From positions 63,635 through 127,634 of the forward strand of contig ADNK01000512.1 of the NCBI GenBank assembly GCA_000320545.1: a stretch of 64,000 nt of DNA, given 5' to 3'. The notes below the pieces were generated by a model. It had not been told where the DNA came from, did no database searches, and was given only the letters and a program-made list of their open reading frames with translations. A program made the translations under genes and the position numbers. Every line of letters starts with the position of its first letter. The first letter of the stretch is position 1. The stretch comes from Bigelowiella natans CCMP2755. Lineage: Eukaryota; Protista; Cercozoa. Shown here piece after piece: positions 35,517 through 43,207 of this stretch.

Positions 35517-36248
35517 TAGTTATAGCACAAAAGCAAAGACTTCATCCTTCAGCTAGCATGCACGGTTGCAACGGACAAGCATTGCAATTTAATGCAACCC
35601 TACTCGCACAGCATCGCACTGCATCGCACTCATCAGCATGGACCTAATAATACCTGCACGAATGCTTCAAAAGCCACAATGCATGCAATCTTGGTCATTG
35701 TGACATCATTGCACAGATGCGCCGGATGAACATGTACACGGTAGATTAGCTTCAGCTCGTCATTGGCTGCTGTGGCATGCCAATGTTGCATGTGCGTGTG
35801 CATGTGACTGAATCGAATCTTGTCCTGCGGCGGCAAAGCGCATGTAGCATCGCAACAGTGCGAGTTGCTGGTATACACACCCGCTGCTTGCTGCGATGCT
35901 ATCATAGCAGCTAATAAGCCCGAGGCAGACATTGATGCAATGACAACGAATGAACATTTATTTGGCTTGAAGTAGCAATTAAATCGAGCGCGATTCGCCG
36001 AATGACGCTACGTAGCACATTCTAGTATCGATGCATATACGGCGGCTATACAAATAGAGCATGCTCTGTTTAATTGTCAGCGTTTATGTGTATGTAAACA
36101 TTTGCATGATGTGCGTGGAACTTTCTTGTGTGGTCAGCAAGTGCTTGACTGCTTGAGCACAAGACTGTTTATTCCTGGGCGTAGGTCGGTGGGTTGGTGG
36201 GTGACGAGCTTCAGGAATATCTGGTTTCATTTTCTTTTCATTCATGAT

Positions 36249-37628
36249 TTAAGAGAAATGGAGCCAGAATTGCTTGCCAAGAATGTTGCCGTATCCTCGT
36301 GCGTCGGAACCGACAGGAGGATTAACATAGTTTCCGTTTCTATCGATCGGATGCGAGAATTTTCCACCGTGTGCAGAATCTGCTACAAAGCCAAATTGCC
36401 CGAATCCACAGCTGCCATACCTGATAATATCAACCACACACAAATGCGAGGTAGGTCATGAATTATTTTTGGAAAGAAATACTGCAAAGAGGAAGGAAGG
36501 TGGAATGGCGGCTGTAATGACAAGCAGGTCGGAGACTAATATGAGATAATATACTCAGAAGTGACGAAGTCATTACTTTTTCTTTTTCGCTCAATCGCAT
36601 CATCAGGACATCTACTTCACGCTGAAACAGTAGGAAAATTACCATCCGAATCCGTTGTTGTTGCTGCAGCAGCAGGCACCATCGAACCACTTGCTCGGCG
36701 CTTTGCCCTTCCTTGGATCGTCGTGCTGCATCTGGGGACCGCTGGGACAGTTACCCTGAGGACACTTTCCGCCATCGTGGCTGTAGGAGAGATCACCGTA
36801 CAGCTTGAAATTGCTGTAGACGAGCGTGTAATCAGCCTGCGATTGGAGGTCGATCTTCACAATGAGATCCACTCTTTTGCCGTGTGCTTCAATCAAACGA
36901 CGCCATTCGGTGATGGCGAGGAAGTAGTCTTTGCCCACAGATTTGCTGCCGAACGTGCGGCGCGCGTTAGATCCGCTCCACATAGCGGTATTAGCATGCC
37001 AGATGTTCGCGACTAGCTCATATCGTCCTCCTTCGACGATTCCGCTAATGGAAGGCAATGGCACTGGCATCGACGGCTTGAAGTGCAACCAAAATTGCTT
37101 GCCTACCACGAAGCCGTAGCCTCGGGCCGCCGAACCAACTGGTGGGTTTACGTAGTTTCCTGAAGGTAAGAAAGAACACACATCACAAACAGCGTGAGCA
37201 CCACGTTCTCAGATACCATCATGCTTTCCAGATTCATGCAAAATCACCGCAGCCCATCCCAAGCGTCGGCGGCTTGTGTTAATCGCTGCTTTTTTCCTTT
37301 AGAAAACAAGATAATATACCGTTCTTGTCAATTGGATGAGAGAAGCGGCCACCATGAGAGCTGTCCGCAACAAACCCAAACTGTCCAAAGCCACACCTTC
37401 CAAACCTGAAAATACACCGATTGCACAACGTTCATACAGAGGTGGCTCGTTTCAGGTATGGTAAGCAGCGACACGCATATGTCGCAAAGAATACTGCTCA
37501 ACTTCCTACAAAATTACCATCCAAATCCATTGTTGCTCGAACAGCAGCAGGCACCATCAAACCATTTACCATGACGACCGATACGCCTGATTTCACATAC
37601 AACAGGATAAACCACACAGACAAACACG

Positions 37629-37680
<52 letters not shown>

Positions 37681-37729
37681 CACCCAGTCACTACCGACAG
37701 TGTCACTTGCTTCACTACACTTTCACATC

Positions 37730-37764
<35 letters not shown>

Positions 37765-40700
37765 GTCGTTGTGCTGCATTTGAGGACCACTGAGGCATTT
37801 CCCTTGCGGGCAGCTGCCCCCCTTGTGGCTGTAGTCGAGGTTGGAGTAGAGCTTGAAGTCGTTGTAGATGAGCAAGTAATCAGGCTGGCTCTGGAGTTGA
37901 ATCTTGACGATGAGGTCGACCTGGCCCTCGTGTTCGTCGATTAGATCACGCCATTGCTGCATGGCCAGGAAGTAGTCCTTGCCAACAACCTTCAGCACAA
38001 GGAGAAGAAGCGCACACAAAATATAGCCGACGTGAGTTTTCAGGCAAGAATGAATATCGTTCCGAGGTTGAAAGCACGAGCGGATAGCAGAGTGTTTAGT
38101 GAATATTGGCATTTTTGCAGTGTTATAGTACCTTGACACCAGCGGTTGCACGGCCCTGGTTGCCCGCCCACATTGGCGAGTAAGGATGCATGATGTTTGC
38201 CACAAGCTCGAACTTTCCAGCACCCTCAACAGGAGGAAGGAACATCTCAGTTGATTTCAGCTCTAGCCAGAACTCCTTCATCTGGATCTCGCCCTCTCCC
38301 CGCGCCGCGGAGCCTACGGGTGGGTTCACGTAGTTACCATCGCGATTGATGGGGTGGGAGAACTTGCCGCCATGCCCCCCGTCCGCGATGAAACCAAATT
38401 GCCCGAAGCCGCAGGATCCATACCATCCAAAGCCGTTGTTGCTTGAGCAGCAGCATGCGCCATCAAACCACTGACTTGGCGCCTTACCTGTCCGTGGGTC
38501 GTCGTGCTGCATTTGTGGGCCGTTCGGGCATTTTCCTTGTGGGCAGCTGCCGCCATTGTGGCTGTATTGCATGTTCTCATAGATCTGAAGTCGTTGTAGA
38601 TGAGATTGTAGTGGCGGCCGTTCTTCATGTAGACCTTTACATGGAGGTTGGCCTTGCCCTTGTGCGCATCGATGGCCTTAGCCCACTCCTGGATCGCTAG
38701 CATATAGTCTTGTCCTGTTGCTATCATGCCAGAGGTCTTACGTGCACCATGATCTTTCCACATGACGTTGTTGGGGTTGATGATACGTGCCACCAGCTGC
38801 ATTTTGCCAGAGACAGGGGTGACAGGTTGGTGCGTGGGCGATATTCCTGGAGTGGGAAGCGGCGTTGGGATGCTAACCACTTGGTTCTTCTGTCCCGTGT
38901 ACAACCAGAACTGCTTGCTCACAATCTCTCCATATCCGCGCGCCGGAGAACCTACAGGTGGATTTACGTAGTTTCCGTTTCGATCGATTGGATGGGAAAA
39001 CTTGCCGCCGTGAGCGCTATCAGCGATGAAACCAAATTGCCCGAAGCCACAGCCGCCTAAGGTGGTGATGAAATATTGTTATGCTTGATTGCTTTTGGAC
39101 GACAGGTTATTACAAATAAGCAAGCCATTATCTATTACCGAACCAGCCATAACCGTTATTGCTGGAACAGCAGCATGCACGATCGAACCACTTGCTGGGG
39201 GCCTTGCCTGATCTAGGATCATCGTGCTGCATTTGGGGTCCCTTCGCGCAGAAGCCTTGCGGACAACTGCCTCCGTCATGGCTATAGCCGAAGTCAGAAT
39301 GAATTTTGAAGTTGTCATAGACGAGCGTGTAATCATCCCCTCGCGCAAGTTTGATTTTCACGATGAGGGTAGATGGCCCGTCGTGGCGGTTGATGAGGTT
39401 CCTCCACTCAGCAAGAGCAAGCATGTAATCCTTACCCTTCACATTTTTGATGCCTGCTGTGACCTTACCGTTAGCCCCCTGCCACATCGCCTCCTGGGGA
39501 TCCACGACGTTTGCCAGCAGCTCGTACTTACCACTGGACCAGTGCATTGGGAGACTCAAAGGCATTGTTGGTTTGAAATGCAACCAAAACGTCTTTCCCA
39601 GGACAAATCCAGCCCCTCTTGCAACAGACCCAACGGGCGGGTTGACGTAGTTTCCGTTGCGATCGATCGGGTGGGAAAATTTACCGCCGTGAGCACCGTC
39701 AGCCATGAAGCCAAACTGTCCAAATCCGCATCCACCTGAACCATTATGATCATCATTATCATCATTGTCGTCGTCATCGTCGTCGTCACCATGATCCAAA
39801 GTTGGGATGGTAAAAGATAAAATTTTGGAAGACGTTGGGCAACGACAAGACACTAGAAAATATGAAATGAAGTCGTTCGTCCATTACCGTACCATCCAAA
39901 CCCGTTGTTTCCTGAGCAGCAGCAAGCACGATCGAACCACTTGCCGATACGGCCATGCCTTGGGTCGTTGTGCTGCATCTGCGGACCGCTCTCACAGTAT
40001 CCCTCAGGACACTCGCCACCCTTGTGGCTGTAGTCAAGGTTGTCGTAGATCTTAAAGTCCTTATACACAAGTGAGTAGTCGGGCCTGTCGAGAAGTTCAA
40101 TCTTAACGATGAGGTCAACTTCTCCCCTATGTGCGTTGATCATGCTGCGCCATTGCTGGATCGCAAGCATGTAGTCCTTGCCATGCAATCCCTTGATGCC
40201 GGCTGTCTTTCTACCGCTGCTGCCCTGCCACATTATGTTGTGTGGGTTGTAGATGCTAGCTACAAGTTCATATCCTCCCTTCCCGCGCTTAGGAGCCTGA
40301 TGGGCTTTTGGTGCCTTCAGGTGAAGCCAGAATTCTTTTAACTGGATCTCTCCCTCTCCTCTCGCCGCGGAGCCGACCGGTGGGTTGACGTAGTTTCCGT
40401 GACGGTTGATAGGGTGTGAGAACTTGCCCCCGTGCGCAGCATCGGCAATGAAACCGAACTGTCCAAAGCCACATCCTCCTGCATGGAAGATGGATAGGAG
40501 GGGGTTTAGTGTCGTAGGGTCCAAGCGAAACGGTACGCATACAATGACTCAGGACATGCAGTGGACATAAAATATTTGATGTTTGTGGTGCTGTATTTGT
40601 TGCTTAGAGGATGAGGGGAGAAAGGGCTAGATTAGGAGAACTACCGAACCATCTGCCAGAATTTGGAGTATAGACCAAGACAAAGAGATATGTGCAGAAT

Positions 40701-42038
40701 GGGGGAGGAATACGTAACAGTGAGAACAGAGCCCCAAATTGTAAAAAAACACAAACAGTAAGACATTGTAGTATTTGTATTAAAAAAAATCTCGTAATGA
40801 TGGTTTATTCAACTAGAGGTTCGAGGAGGAAGACGATGGTAAGTGTATGAACGACCCGAATCCGTTGTTACTGGAGCAGCAACATGCCTTGTTGAACCAT
40901 TTTCCACTCTTTCCAACTCTGTCGTTGTTATTGTTGCACAGGAGGAGAAAATGTTGTTTATGTGAAATCAATGTAGTAGAATCATCACATCTTGTTGTAT
41001 TTCCTGCCTATGTGGTGGTGGGATCGACCTTGGATCATTGTGCTGCATCTGCGGTCCTCGTTGACAATAGCTCTGAGGAAGGGGGGATCGTTTTATTAAT
41101 CAGCATCCCACGAGAAACGACAACAGTGAGAACGAACAAACTTTCTCATCTAGCGAAAGGCCTCCCAAAAACCCTTATCACGTACCTGTGGGCAACTGCC
41201 TCCGTTATGGCTGTAGTCAAGGTTCGAATGCACTTTGAAATCACTGCAAAGATGTTACATAGCAGAAGTTGCTAAATTAGAATTGATCTGACTCTTTCCT
41301 CTCTCTCTCTCTCTCTCTCTCACTCACTCACTCTCCCACCCCCCCTCCCCCTCCCTTTGCCTAGCACCGACAACAAGTAGTACATTTTACGCGATCTTAC
41401 TTATAGATGAGGGTATAATTGGGCGTGGTCTTCATGGCGATCTTCACGTGCAGGTCAACGTGGCCATTGTGCGCCTCTATCATTGTACGCCAGGAATGAA
41501 GCGACAGCATGTAGTCCTGACCAGGCTCTGATTTCCCTGCAGTTGTAAGGCCATTACTGCCCTGCCACATTGCCAAACTCGGGTTCACAACGCTTGCGAC
41601 GAGGACCTAGTGGATAGAAGAACGATCTTTAGGTCTTGTTAGGTCCGGTGAGGAACCAAAGATAGCGAGGAGACACTGTATGGGTATTACAGTGGCACAA
41701 GGCTATAGATTGATGAAAGGAGTGACATTTATATTACCATTCTCCCTGCGTCTGGAGTTGGGAGGCGCGTAGGAAAGGCGGTCGGATCGGGCGTCGGGAG
41801 TGGGGTGGGACTGGGTGTTGGATTAGGTGTTGGGTTAGGGGTAGGGCGAGGAGTAGGATGAGGACTTGGGAGGGGGGTAGGGAACGCAGAGGGAGCTGGT
41901 GTTGGATCGGGAGTTGGGGCTGGTGTCGGTTCTGGGGTGGGCGCTGGTGACGGGAACCTATATCAAAACGAGGAGAGTATTTGAGATATTGTCTATAGTA
42001 TATTAATATATAATATAATATTAAATCTTTTATAAATA

Positions 42039-42080
<42 letters not shown>

Positions 42081-42137
42081 CGTATAATGGAGAATTTGTG
42101 CTCGTGTGTGTGCGTAGAGAGAAAGAGAAAGCGACCG

Positions 42138-42175
<38 letters not shown>

Positions 42176-43207
42176 CTCCATATGGGGAATGAAGAACAAA
42201 ACTGAACAGCGATATATCTTAGATATGAACGTGTTACATTGTCGGATATTTAGTGGTTGGTTCCGGTGTTGGAAATTGTGATGGTGCTGGTGTGGGGTCC
42301 GGCGTGGGCTCTTTAGTGGTCGGCGCCTTTGTCGGCTTAGGGGTGGGATGCGGTGATGGCATAGGGGTAGGCTTCAGGGTTGGGTTAGGTGTCGGTTTTG
42401 GAGTGGGAAAGGCACTAGGAGCCTCGGTCGGTTTTTTAGTTGGCTCTGCCGTAATGGCCACAATACGAGGAAGTTCCTTACTCCAGGAACACTCTGCAGC
42501 TTCTACGGCGCAGCATTCTTTAACACATTCCTGCACGTGCTTACTGTTGTAAGGTGGCTCCTCCCTTAGCATAGAGTAGGCACCGAAGTCGCAGACATCA
42601 GTTCCTTCGCAGTCGTACAGCTTACAGTCACACTTGCGGTTCTCTTGCCCGCCCTGACACGTGTACATATAGGCCTCGGGCAGGGACATGCACCATGATG
42701 CGTCAGCCCTGTGCCCTGAGCGCTGCTCCCATTCAGCTTTCAGAGCGGTCTGATGAGTTGCCTGCCAAAAGTCCAGGGGAAGCCTGCGTATGCGATCCAT
42801 TTTTAGAAAATAAAATGTTAAATTCAAGTTAGTACTCTTTCAGCAATTTCTTATTACCCAGTTGCCTCCTTGTCGCTAGTGTAGAAAACTTTTGCGCAAA
42901 TGTGGTGTGTGATATTGAAGAGACACTTTCCATCATCTCCACATGTACGAGCCATCATCAGGTCCATTTCTGGTTCCGCATAAGCATCTCCTGCGCTGAG
43001 TCCTTCACCTTGACCAACTGTGTTTCGCATCAGCTCGATGTCTTTTTCGCCCGGAAGAGCATCGTCGCGTTGCCCCGGCTGCTCCTTTAACTGGAGAATA
43101 CCCTGTTCTGAATCCAACCTAGCTTTGTTTGTCAGAGCCTGCACGCTAATAGTGCATAATATTAATGCAAGTAGCCAACTCACACATGGGCTGGTGCGGG
43201 AGCCCAT
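36249..43207 (-). CDS. Secreted protein: signal peptide, Cys-rich domain, Pro/Thr stalk and six tandem ~165-aa Cys-rich repeats (weakly fibrinogen-C-like); one apparent 1-nt frameshift
   Basis: Signal [24 protein letters not shown]. PTPxPTP repeats at 41740-42450. Six copies of xLVAxI...MW...G[KQ]DYxL...W...LxVKI...YxLxYxxFK...YSHxGGxCPxGxC..GPQMQHxD...WFxxACCCSxNNG[FY]GW[YF][41 protein letters not shown]...FWL. Stop at 36249. Confidence 0.9.

What the first reader, a model, noticed from the sequence alone, without database searches (positions are those of the whole stretch)
36249..41610. Secreted protein with six copies of an unfamiliar Cys-rich domain, built as a duplicated triplet (ABC)(ABC)
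Seen: six ~165-aa repeats share a near-invariant core (GPQMQHxD, ACCCSxNNG[FY][10 protein letters not shown], HGGxFSHPI, [14 protein letters not shown], FWL). Diagnostic residues pair them. R1 matches R4 (GQDY, LHVK, GEGEIQxKEFWL, both preceded by a PTPLPTP linker). R2 matches R5 ([16 protein letters not shown], GFVxGKxFWLHFKPxMP). R3 matches R6 ([23 protein letters not shown]). Established: the segment GKDYxL...LIVKIxL...Y..FK echoes the fibrinogen C-terminal domain pattern GEFWLG...LRIDL...Y..F, and ficolin/intelectin-type lectins act as trimers. Inference: two single-chain pseudo-trimeric lectin-like heads on a mucin-like Pro/Thr stalk, possibly an undescribed protist adhesion, prey-recognition or defence protein. 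The CCC and His/Gly-rich half matches no domain I recognise.
Basis: partly seen in the sequence, partly recalled or inferred. Interest (0 to 1): 0.85.

Follow-up and report, generated by a model that had tools for sequence, protein, structure and literature searches.

The report
Six-headed fibrinogen-like protein of an alga
A marine alga (Bigelowiella natans) expresses a secreted protein that carries six tandem copies of a very divergent fibrinogen-type recognition domain on a mucin-like stalk; this domain type is known almost only from animal lectins and matrix proteins.

Summary
The repeats are real. They lie in one 15-exon minus-strand gene (43207-36249), JGI model Bigna1/69513 of Bigelowiella natans. 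Spliced RNA contigs from two laboratory studies and one marine metatranscriptome confirm the junctions I could check. They also show that the frameshift in repeat 4 is one base missing from the assembly. The RNA-supported protein is 1559 aa: signal peptide, Cys-rich N-module, 146-aa Pro/Thr stalk, then six 182-184-aa domains that are 60-72% identical.

The "unfamiliar" domain is a very divergent fibrinogen-related domain (FReD), made of subdomains B and P without subdomain A.
- Pfam and PDB sequence searches see nothing.
- An AlphaFold model of a 55%-identical relative matches only FReDs (Foldseek E 1e-5; VIA Z 12-13.8).
- A model of the window's own repeat 6 has FReDs as its six best matches among 48,161 chains (Z 6.5-7.3, next 3.2).
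- Bacterial relatives keep the FReD 'YCDM..GGGW' start and link the two families.

The family is tiny: 19 hits among 1.84 billion representatives. The (ABC)(ABC) history is only partly supported: R1+R4 pair, but R2+R5 and R3+R6 are neither recovered nor rejected. Lectin function and pseudo-trimeric heads remain untested because the complex predictor was unavailable. The scan noted this same stretch once more (s1-724903), also reading it as a possible divergent FReD.

The parts
36249..43207 (-). Whole gene, 15 exons. E1 43207-42858, E2 42783-42238, E3 41957-41738, E4 41606-41401, E5 41243-41186, E6 41072-41029, E7 40918-40849, E8 40479-39888, E9 39735-39139, E10 39056-38132, E11 37989-37763, E12 37586-37518, E13 37405-37320, E14 37159-36643, E15 36420-36252, stop 36251-36249. 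The RNA-supported CDS is 4680 nt (1559 aa).
   Evidence: Exon anchors. Spliced contigs of runs X1, X3 and X17 (tables 5 and 8). Translation. JGI model P0020.
42858..43207 (-). Exon 1: start codon, N-terminal hydrophobic signal-peptide-like segment (...[13 protein letters not shown]), then an acidic region.
   Evidence: The signal peptide is read from the sequence; no predictor was run.
42468..42783 (-). Cys-rich N-terminal module with no Pfam match. It is shared with at least three other genes of this genome, each followed by a Pro/Thr stalk.
   Evidence: no family. (paralogs on contigs C1132, C2607 and C1297, about 49% identity).
41738..42467 (-). Pro/Thr-rich mucin-like stalk: the end of exon 2 and all of exon 3, with an intron at 41958-42237. 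It is 146 aa, with 56 Pro and 31 Thr.
   Evidence: Weak Pfam PT-repeat hit.
40315..41606 (-). Repeat R1 (protein residues 372-553), split by four introns. It has GFGSF where the other repeats have GFGW[YF].
39572..40278 (-). Repeat R2 (residues 568-750).
38893..39532 (-). Repeat R3 (residues 766-949).
38809..38892 (-). 30-aa Pro/Thr linker between the two triplets. It contains PTPLPTP, as does the stalk before R1.
38255..38808 (-). Repeat R4 (residues 980-1162). It has no intron and contains the 1-nt assembly gap.
38585..38586 (-). Site of the apparent frameshift. All three RNA contig sets carry one extra base here (T on the + strand), which gives ...NDF-K-IYENM... in frame.
   Evidence: table 4. 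DNA.
37077..38218 (-). Repeat R5 (residues 1177-1358), split by four introns. The exon 11 donor lies at the first GT of a (GT)n microsatellite.
36252..37028 (-). Repeat R6 (residues 1377-1559). The protein ends right after the last strand (FWLHFS-stop), with no TM or GPI signal.
   Evidence: P0001 (a marine transcript fragment) is identical to it.
40480..40848 (-). Non-canonical intron between exons 7 and 8. On the coding strand it starts AT and ends CA, and the cut position is unambiguous.
   Evidence: table 5 (three runs, 'both' = 0). The record arithmetic in table 8 leaves no extra letters.

Best explanation
This is an intact, well-expressed nuclear gene of Bigelowiella natans for a secreted 1559-aa glycoprotein-type molecule. 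It has a signal peptide, a Cys-rich N-terminal module shared with other stalked proteins of this alga, and a 146-aa Pro/Thr (mucin-like) spacer. Six tandem copies of a very divergent fibrinogen-related domain follow (subdomains B and P only, with three disulfide-capable Cys pairs).

Shown: gene structure, expression, purifying selection, the FReD fold, and homology through bacterial intermediates.

Inferred: each domain is a ligand-recognition unit whose pocket lies in the most conserved part, the P subdomain (QHND...[29 protein letters not shown]...GNY.NPPVGS). This follows ficolins, tachylectin-5A, FIBCD1 and angiopoietins. Animal FReD proteins, and this family's own single-domain members, reach multivalency by oligomerising through coiled coils or collagen. 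This protein instead reaches it by putting six heads on one chain. The most likely role is high-avidity binding of a repetitive extracellular ligand at the cell surface, probably a carbohydrate on bacteria, prey or the alga's own coat.
For: Gene and RNA:
- Spliced contigs in X1 and X3 (organism A) and X17 (marine metatranscriptome) match the exon junctions within the region laid (E4 to E15), and the loose end at 41607 matches the end of E3. They also restore the frame at 38585.
- The shares of sequence words held (0.61-0.64) equal the exonic fraction.

Selection:
- 12 of 13 coding differences from the marine transcripts are synonymous.
- Third codon positions between repeats are near saturation (34-45% identity) while the proteins stay 60-72% identical.

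Fold:
- P0005 is 55% identical to the R6 fragment P0001. Its model has domain pLDDT of about 90.
- Foldseek gives 141 PDB hits at E<=1e-3, and every listed hit is an FReD.
- VIA gives Z 12-13.8 at rmsd about 3.0-3.5 A over 164-175 residues, against Ang1, ficolins, tenascin, MFAP4, TL5A, FIBCD1 and fibrinogen.
- The window's own R6 model, searched without bias over 48,161 chains, has FReDs as its six best hits (Z 6.5-7.3), and the next hit scores 3.2.

Sequence bridge:
- Bacterial proteins P0014, P0016 and P0019 match the repeat profile over nearly its full length.
- They also carry a Pfam Fibrinogen_C N-terminal match. P0016 scores 27.6 bits, above the 22-bit gathering cut-off.
- The joint profile hits MFAP4 (6e-5), fibrinogen beta (5e-4) and tenascin in the PDB.

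Architecture of relatives:
- Signal peptide + long helix + domain in P0005, P0024, P0007 and P0009.
- Collagen-like repeat (weak Pfam hit, 18.8 bits against a 27.2-bit cut-off) + domain in P0019, and TSP1 repeats + domain in P0025.

N-terminal cassette shared with other stalked proteins.
Against: - No ligand, metal or sugar binding was tested.
- The canonical FReD Ca2+ loop (D-x-D-x-D before the first P-subdomain Cys) is not recognisable in the sequence. In the HMMER alignment it falls in an insertion of fibrinogen relative to this family.
- Many FReDs bind proteins rather than sugars.
- Profiles built from the window alone or from eukaryotic members alone do not reach any FReD by sequence. 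Pfam PF00147 does not match any repeat.
- The best fold evidence comes from a relative. The window's own model lacks both end strands, and its Foldseek E-values are not significant.
- The signal peptide and extracellular location are read by eye.
Confidence: 0.6

Rival explanations
1. One reading: the six domains fold into two single-chain pseudo-trimeric heads (R1-R2-R3 and R4-R5-R6) that mimic ficolin-type trimers.
For: - A PTPLPTP stretch precedes R1 and R4, and similar linkers follow R2 and R5.
- R1+R4 form a clade.
- Clades of neighbouring repeats, R1R2R3 or R4R5R6, are disfavoured (AU p 0.04 and 0.057).
- Single-domain relatives carry a predicted long helix (P0005) or a weakly matched collagen-like segment (P0019) before the domain, as oligomeric animal FReD proteins do.
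Against: - No packing prediction could be run.
- R2+R5 and R3+R6 are not recovered.
- Subdomain A is absent from these repeats.
- The mid-domain region and the intron phases group neighbours (R2 with R3, R5 with R6) rather than partners.
Confidence: 0.2
2. A structural extracellular-matrix or cell-coat protein. The FReD-like domains would mediate protein-protein assembly, as in fibrinogen, tenascin, MFAP4 or angiopoietin, rather than sugar recognition.
For: - The top structural matches include angiopoietins, tenascins, MFAP4 and fibrinogen.
- The canonical Ca2+/acetyl-site motif is not recognisable.
- High expression: contig depth 150 in X1.
- The N-terminal cassette is shared with other stalked surface proteins.
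Against: - No partner is known.
- Only two genes in the genome carry the domain.
- A fold match cannot tell a protein ligand from a sugar ligand.
Confidence: 0.25
3. A decaying pseudogene: a frameshift in R4 and a broken splice junction in R1.
For: The assembly lacks one base at 38585/38586, and exons 7 and 8 cannot be joined in frame through GT-AG sites. The JGI model is garbled at both places.
Against: - RNA contigs of three data sets carry the missing base and join exons 7 and 8 in frame through a non-canonical intron.
- 12 of 13 coding differences from the marine transcripts are synonymous.
- All six repeats keep all six Cys and 85 invariant columns.
Confidence: 0.02
4. A protein sent to the plastid or periplastidial compartment by a bipartite leader, as many nucleus-encoded proteins of this alga are.
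For: An N-terminal signal peptide is also the first half of chlorarachniophyte plastid leaders (general knowledge).
Against: The region after the signal peptide is acidic, not transit-peptide-like. The Pro/Thr mucin stalk and the disulfide-rich domains point to the secretory pathway and the cell exterior. This is inference only.
Confidence: 0.03

Closest known systems
Fibrinogen-related domains of animal lectins (ficolins, tachylectin-5A, FIBCD1)
   Same: - Same fold over subdomains B and P: Z about 12 at rmsd about 3-3.8 A over about 165-177 residues for the relative P0005, and H-ficolin Z 6.6 for the window's R6.
- The P-subdomain loop C...G.GW..C aligns.
- Both are extracellular and multivalent.
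- A bacterial family member (P0019) combines a weakly matched collagen-like repeat with the domain, a ficolin-like arrangement.
   Different: - Only 8-16% sequence identity, and no Pfam PF00147 match.
- Subdomain A is missing.
- A CCC triplet plus a C.xG.C pair adds two extra disulfide-capable pairs.
- The D-x-D-x-D Ca2+ loop is not recognisable.
- Six domains sit on one chain, instead of one domain per chain assembled by collagen.
Coiled-coil FReD proteins (angiopoietins/ANGPTL, FGL1, tenascins, fibrinogen beta/gamma, MFAP4)
   Same: - These are the best structural matches: Ang1 Z 13.8, ANGPTL2 Foldseek E 1e-5.
- The profile that includes the bacterial members hits MFAP4, fibrinogen beta and tenascin by sequence.
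- The single-domain relatives P0005, P0024, P0007 and P0009 place a helical region before the domain (predicted as one long helix in P0005), as these proteins do.
   Different: The window protein has no coiled coil. It uses a mucin stalk and tandem repetition, and its ligands are unknown.
Intelectins (X-type lectins)
   Same: They have an FReD-like N-terminal part. The joint profile touches XEEL and a serum lectin weakly, at E 0.025 and 0.0013.
   Different: Those matches cover only the segment before the window's domain (profile positions 79-161). No intelectin is among the 50 best structural matches listed, and no intelectin-specific part is present.
Bacterial FReD-like proteins of a Deltaproteobacteria MAG (P0016 = MBI4704358.1; also P0014, P0015, P0019)
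   Same: These are the nearest relatives outside eukaryotes. They align over the whole domain with the same invariant W, Y, H and the QHND motif.
   Different: They keep subdomain A ('YCDM.T.GGGW') and have only the single P-subdomain Cys pair. They form the outgroup to all eukaryotic members (91/86).

Membership tests
Fibrinogen-related domain, Pfam PF00147 Fibrinogen_C (sequence family) | Match to the Pfam model at or above its gathering score | tested here: not met
   No Fibrinogen_C hit at E<=1 for any exon-wise piece of the six repeats, nor at E<=0.1 for the eukaryotic relatives. Only the bacterial relatives match, and only in their N-terminal part. P0016 alone, at 27.6 bits, passes the 22-bit cut-off.
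Fibrinogen C-terminal domain-like fold (superfamily level) | Three-dimensional fold of subdomains B and P | tested here: met
   - P0005 model: 141 Foldseek hits at E<=1e-3, and every listed hit is an FReD.
- P0005 model: VIA Z 12-13.8.
- Window R6 model: the six best of 48,161 chains are FReDs at Z 6.5-7.3, and the next scores 3.2.
Fibrinogen C-terminal domain-like fold (superfamily level) | N-terminal subdomain A (about 45 residues with a disulfide, ending ...YCDM.T.GGGWT) | tested here: not met
   The repeats begin at the strand equivalent to GWTV(IQ) and are preceded only by 14-30-aa Pro-rich linkers without Cys. The R6 model aligns to chain ranges that start well after subdomain A.
Fibrinogen C-terminal domain-like fold (superfamily level) | P-subdomain disulfide loop C-x(5-7)-GGWW-x(2-3)-C | tested here: met
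   CCCS.NNG[FY]GW[YF]G.C aligns with QCSKEDGGGWW of fibrinogen beta in the HMMER alignment. The second Cys is invariant across the family (C265 of P0005). The pairing itself is inferred.
Fibrinogen C-terminal domain-like fold (superfamily level) | Ca2+ site D-x-D-x-D before the first P-subdomain Cys | tested here: inconclusive
   No such motif appears in any repeat. In one search the fibrinogen 'drdn' segment is an insertion relative to this family. An invariant QHND could serve a related role, but this is untested.
Fibrinogen C-terminal domain-like fold (superfamily level) | Homology through intermediate sequences | tested here: met
   The bacterial proteins match the repeat profile (E 5e-6 to 6e-4 against 1.84e9 proteins; about 1e-16 to 1e-18 in a local database of 17 sequences). 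They also carry the FReD start. The joint profile hits PDB FReDs. Profiles without the bacterial members do not.
Ficolin | Collagen-like stalk N-terminal to a single FReD; trimer-based oligomer | tested here: not met
   The window protein has no G-x-y repeats. It has a Pro/Thr stalk and six domains. Oligomeric state was not testable.
Intelectin / X-type lectin | Intelectin-specific C-terminal part with Ca2+-dependent exocyclic-diol site | tested here: not met
   Only weak, N-terminal-only profile matches to XEEL and a serum lectin. No intelectin is among the 50 best structural matches listed.
   Complex prediction was busy and then withdrawn.

The most novel reading that the evidence does not exclude
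The fibrinogen-type recognition module, with the same oligomerisation logic as in animals (coiled coil or collagen in front of the head), exists as an old and very rare lineage in marine protists and bacteria. In B. natans it has been turned into a covalent hexavalent receptor, perhaps two pseudo-trimeric heads. A mixotrophic alga would use it to recognise bacteria or prey surfaces, making it a non-animal counterpart of ficolin-type innate recognition.
Probability: 0.15. Interest if true: 0.75.

Novelty: new variant of a known kind. Interest (0 to 1): 0.55.

Why it matters
- FReDs are treated in the literature as proteins found across metazoan phyla. PMC11401434, citing Doolittle et al. [quoted passage not shown] I found no paper linking them to Bigelowiella.
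- This is an expressed, selected FReD-fold protein in a rhizarian alga. It belongs to a family so divergent that Pfam misses it, and so rare that it has 19 representatives among 1.84 billion.
- It shows a second way to reach multivalency: six heads on one chain rather than oligomerised single heads. It also gives a tractable candidate for a surface-recognition molecule in a model mixotrophic alga.
- It gives sequence intermediates for asking whether the animal FReD has pre-metazoan or bacterial roots.
- Practical point: the public gene model (Bigna1/69513) is wrong in three places, and the assembly lacks one base.

Tried and rejected
- Pfam on ten exon-wise pieces gave no domain hit; only weak hits below the cut-offs (PT repeat, DUF3228, SH3-A_UBE2O).
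- PDB sequence search found nothing related with one exon, with the window-only profile A1 or with the eukaryote-only profile A4.
- Searching with P0004 region 1690-1888 for long multi-domain relatives returned only P0004 itself.
- The profile search A2 in the 5.8-billion collection added only P0024-P0028.
- Foldseek against viral structures gave nothing at E<=0.001.
- ESM Atlas: for R6 the nearest named cluster is Fibrinogen_C at 0.85, a lead only. For the N-terminal module there was no usable hit.
- Complex prediction for R2+R3 was busy twice and then withdrawn, so there is no result.
- I tried to place the uncultured relatives taxonomically through a neighbouring glycosyltransferase. There were no named hits, and the contig is 68-75% GC.
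- Doolittle et al. 2012 (PMC3575912) is not held.
- The pseudogene reading was rejected on RNA evidence.
- A clean ABC-ABC tree was not obtained.
Exons went by reference, and whole domains were taken from database proteins (P0001, P0005, P0020). The joined CDS was built only inside local scripts, with N (read as X) at the 1-nt gap.
It only skipped simple repeats at 37616-37770, 39740-39796 and 41288-41365.

Full report
**What is at the coordinates**

The minus strand of 36249-43207 holds one multi-exon eukaryotic gene. I placed 15 exons by reading frames and splice sites.

The protein collection holds the JGI model of this gene, P0020 = jgi/Bigna1/69513, EP00466_Bigelowiella_natans_P004166, 1546 aa. 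The organism is therefore the chlorarachniophyte alga Bigelowiella natans.

**RNA evidence**

Twenty public runs hold the stretch, and the best hold 0.61-0.64 of its sequence words. That is about the exonic fraction (roughly 0.66), which is what spliced RNA would give.

I laid four runs on 36200-41700. Single contigs of about 4.8 kb (X1, X3) and shorter contigs from a marine metatranscriptome (X17) skip the introns at the positions I had placed. Two junctions, E8/E9 and E11/E12, are not listed as joints because simple repeats there were skipped. They follow from the contiguous record coordinates in table 8. The loose end at 41607 reproduces the end of exon 3.

Two problems of the genomic sequence are resolved by the RNA.
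- **Frameshift in R4.** After ...YNDF the frame slips by one base. All three RNA data sets carry one extra base behind 38585, which restores ...[13 protein letters not shown]... So the assembly, or the sequenced allele, lacks one base.
- **Exons 7 and 8.** They cannot be joined in frame through GT-AG sites. The RNA joins 40849 to 40479 without ambiguity. The intron reads AT...CA on the coding strand, and R1 then reads ...NNGFGSFGGCGFG...

With these two corrections the CDS is 4680 nt, or 1559 aa, with a single terminal stop. The JGI model is wrong in three places. It drops nine residues in R1, reads R4 in the shifted frame, and inserts a spurious 13-aa exon in R5.

Raw reads of X21 cover only the 3' end, as a tag-type library would.

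**Architecture**

- A hydrophobic N-terminal signal-like segment, followed by an acidic stretch.
- A Cys-rich module without any Pfam match.
- A 146-aa Pro/Thr stalk with 56 Pro and 31 Thr.
- Six domains of 182-184 aa, joined by linkers of 14-30 aa.
- The protein ends immediately after the last strand, with no membrane anchor signal.

The Cys-rich module plus Pro/Thr stalk recurs at about 49% identity in at least three other loci of the genome, at least one of which (C2607) carries other C-terminal modules. It therefore looks like a shared N-terminal cassette that presents different heads.

**Check of the observation**

In the six-way alignment 85 of 184 columns are invariant, including six Cys, and pairwise identity is 60-72%. 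Third codon positions are only 34-45% identical, so the duplications are old and every copy is under purifying selection. Of the 13 coding differences between the genome and the marine transcripts, 12 are synonymous.

The proposed (ABC)(ABC) history is only partly borne out.
- R1+R4 is a clade (91/92) with 11 exclusive shared columns.
- R2+R5 (5 columns) and R3+R6 (3 columns) are not in the ML tree. That tree weakly prefers (R3,(R2,(R5,R6))). The AU test does not reject either pair (p 0.27 and 0.37).
- Clades of neighbours are disfavoured: R1R2R3 at p 0.04 and R4R5R6 at p 0.057.
- The linkers favour the triplet duplication. PTPLPTP precedes R1 and R4, and P[TS]MP.xLP follows R2 and R5.
- The middle of the domain groups neighbours instead: FDR in R2 and R3 against FDG in R4-R6, and 88% identity between R4 and R6 in columns 91-135.
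- So does the exact position of the intron at the GW|G junction: phase 1 in R2 and R3, phase 2 in R5 and R6, phase 0 in R1, and no intron in R4.

This pattern suggests a duplicated triplet later blurred by gene conversion and intron loss. I did not test that reading formally.

**What the domain is**

By sequence alone it is an orphan. Pfam and the PDB give nothing for the exons, for a window-only profile or for a eukaryote-only profile.

A profile of the exon-wise repeat pieces, searched against 1.84 billion representative proteins, found only 19 proteins.
- **From this genome:** a fragment of this gene (P0001, from a marine transcript catalogue), and a second B. natans gene on contig C1790 (P0004/P0002). 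The P0004 model has Laminin_G_3 domains plus one copy of the domain.
- **From uncultured organisms:** a handful of proteins on contigs that carry eukaryote-type genes, namely an SPX-PHO4 transporter, TNFR/ephrin-receptor-like repeats and a retroelement RT/RNaseH.
  - P0005, P0024, P0007 and P0009: signal peptide, helical region, one domain.
  - P0025: TSP1 repeats plus one domain.
  - P0003: two domains.
  - P0006: one domain at the C-terminal end of a 531-aa protein.
- **Weaker hits:** proteins whose one named member comes from a Deltaproteobacteria MAG (P0014, P0015, P0016, P0019).

These last proteins are decisive. They align with the repeats over the whole domain, sharing invariant W, Y, H, the QHND motif and the second P-loop Cys. 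Immediately in front of the domain they carry the hallmark start of fibrinogen-related domains, '...YCDM.T.GGGW(T/M)LL'. Pfam recognises that start as Fibrinogen_C. P0016 scores 27.6 bits, above the 22-bit cut-off, and P0019 also has a weak collagen-repeat hit (18.8 bits, below the 27.2-bit cut-off).

A profile that includes them hits solved FReDs: MFAP4 at 6e-5, fibrinogen beta at 5e-4, and tenascins at about 1e-3. These alignments run into subdomains B and P. They pair the family's 'sdYllsl..W' with GEYWLG, 'L.V.i....Y.lvY.dF.L' with LRVDL....YA.Y..F.I, HND with HNG, and 'CCss..fGWy' with 'QCSKEDGGGWW'.

**Structure**

An AlphaFold2 model of P0005 has pLDDT of about 90 across the domain. P0005 is 55% identical to the R6 fragment P0001.
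- Foldseek finds 141 PDB chains at E<=1e-3, and every listed one is an FReD.
- VIA-align gives Z 12-13.8 at rmsd about 3.0-3.5 A over 164-175 residues. The matches are Ang1, Ang2, ficolins, tenascins, MFAP4, FGL1, tachylectin-5A, FIBCD1 and fibrinogen.

For the window's own sequence the only whole-domain reference available was P0001. It is R6 lacking the first and last strands. Its model has mean pLDDT 81.7.
- The Foldseek list is again all FReDs, but the E-values are not significant (0.065 and above).
- The Foldseek-independent search of 48,161 representative chains puts six FReDs on top, at Z 6.5-7.3 over 124-142 of 161 residues. The next chain scores 3.2.
- The aligned chain ranges start after subdomain A.

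The repeat is therefore a divergent FReD made of subdomains B and P. It has no subdomain A, and it has two extra Cys pairs: the CCC triplet and C.xG.C. The 'unrecognised CCC/His/Gly half' is the P subdomain.

**How it most likely works**

Shown: the protein is expressed, is under selection, and carries six FReD-fold heads behind a signal-like leader and a mucin-type spacer.

Inferred from the family:
- In ficolins, tachylectin-5A and FIBCD1 the ligand pocket lies in the P subdomain. In this family the P subdomain is by far the most conserved part.
- Animal FReD proteins gain avidity by oligomerising single heads through coiled coils or collagen. The single-domain relatives found here have similar preludes: a predicted long helix in P0005, and a weakly matched collagen-like repeat in P0019.
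- The B. natans protein instead strings six heads on one chain.

I therefore read it as a hexavalent, high-avidity binder of a repetitive extracellular ligand, most likely a carbohydrate on bacteria, prey or the alga's own surface. A protein-binding matrix role is the main rival.

Three things are open: whether the canonical Ca2+ site is present (it is not recognisable), whether the invariant QHND and HGG.FSHPI residues bind a metal, and whether triplets pack as pseudo-trimers. The complex predictor was unavailable.

**Comparison and novelty**

The fold is known, so this is not a new kind of domain. What is new:
- a sequence family invisible to Pfam;
- the loss of subdomain A together with added disulfides;
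- six tandem copies on one chain;
- occurrence in a rhizarian alga and a few uncultured marine organisms, with bacterial relatives as the outgroup.

The literature I could reach describes FReDs as occurring in all metazoan phyla (PMC11401434). No paper links them to Bigelowiella. I could not read Doolittle et al. 2012, so statements about known non-animal FReDs rest on my own knowledge and are not verified here.

**Limits**

- The best fold evidence is for a relative, not for a complete window repeat.
- The signal peptide is judged by eye.
- The direction of any bacteria-eukaryote transfer is not resolved.
The joined CDS exists only in local scripts, with X at the 1-nt gap.

Noticed in passing
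window 38585-38586 (also 40849-40918 and 37518-37770): The assembly lacks one base in R4 relative to all RNA contigs. The public JGI model Bigna1/69513 (P0020) is wrong in three places: nine residues dropped in R1, R4 read in the shifted frame, and a spurious 13-aa exon in R5.
   Followed up: yes
window 40480-40848, minus strand: An intron with non-canonical ends (AT...CA on the coding strand), supported without ambiguity by contigs of three runs. It resembles neither GT-AG nor clean U12 AT-AC. Whether small assembly errors at the borders explain it is unknown.
   Followed up: partly
window 42468-42783; loci L017 (C1132), L018 (C2607), L019 (C1297): The Cys-rich N-terminal module followed by a Pro/Thr stalk is a cassette shared by at least three other B. 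natans genes at about 49% identity. In L018 it is followed by other Cys-rich modules. The module has no Pfam or Atlas match.
   Followed up: partly
G000:C1790:9615-10554 (L009, L012); proteins P0004 and P0002: This is the only other gene of the genome with the domain, present as a single C-terminal copy. The 1888-aa JGI model also contains Laminin_G_3 domains. Just before the domain it keeps 'DYLC...GGGSF', which looks like a remnant of FReD subdomain A. It shares the intron after HNDPR with R1 and R5.
   Followed up: partly
window 37763-37700 and 37690-37600: The donor of exon 11 is the first GT of a long (GT)n microsatellite, and a second (GT)n lies in the same intron. Length changes there would leave the donor in place.
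   Followed up: no
window, repeat junctions near 40849, 39888, 39139, 37518, 36643: The intron at the GW|G junction sits in three different phases: R1 phase 0, R2 and R3 phase 1, R5 and R6 phase 2. It is absent from R4. Neighbouring repeats share the phase rather than the proposed ABC partners, which points to gene conversion or intron sliding.
   Followed up: partly
runs X17 and protein P0001 (ERR1711998): Near-identical transcripts occur in a marine metatranscriptome (14 differences listed over about 3.3 kb) and in a marine transcript catalogue. So this alga, or a very close relative, expresses the gene in the sea.
   Followed up: partly
proteins P0019, P0016, P0026-P0028: P0019 joins a weakly matched collagen-like repeat to an FReD-like head, a ficolin-like architecture. 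P0016, from a Deltaproteobacteria MAG (HY744), joins STIG1-like Cys repeats to one. P0027 and P0028, from the same MAG, carry Pfam Fibrinogen_C matches, and P0026 carries two FReD-like starts.
   Followed up: no
locus L013 (ENA ERZ27317771 contig): The contig that encodes the single-domain relative P0023 is 68-75% GC. It carries eukaryote-type neighbours (TNFR/ephrin-receptor-like repeats, and RT/RNaseH on a sister contig). The organism is unidentified.
   Followed up: partly
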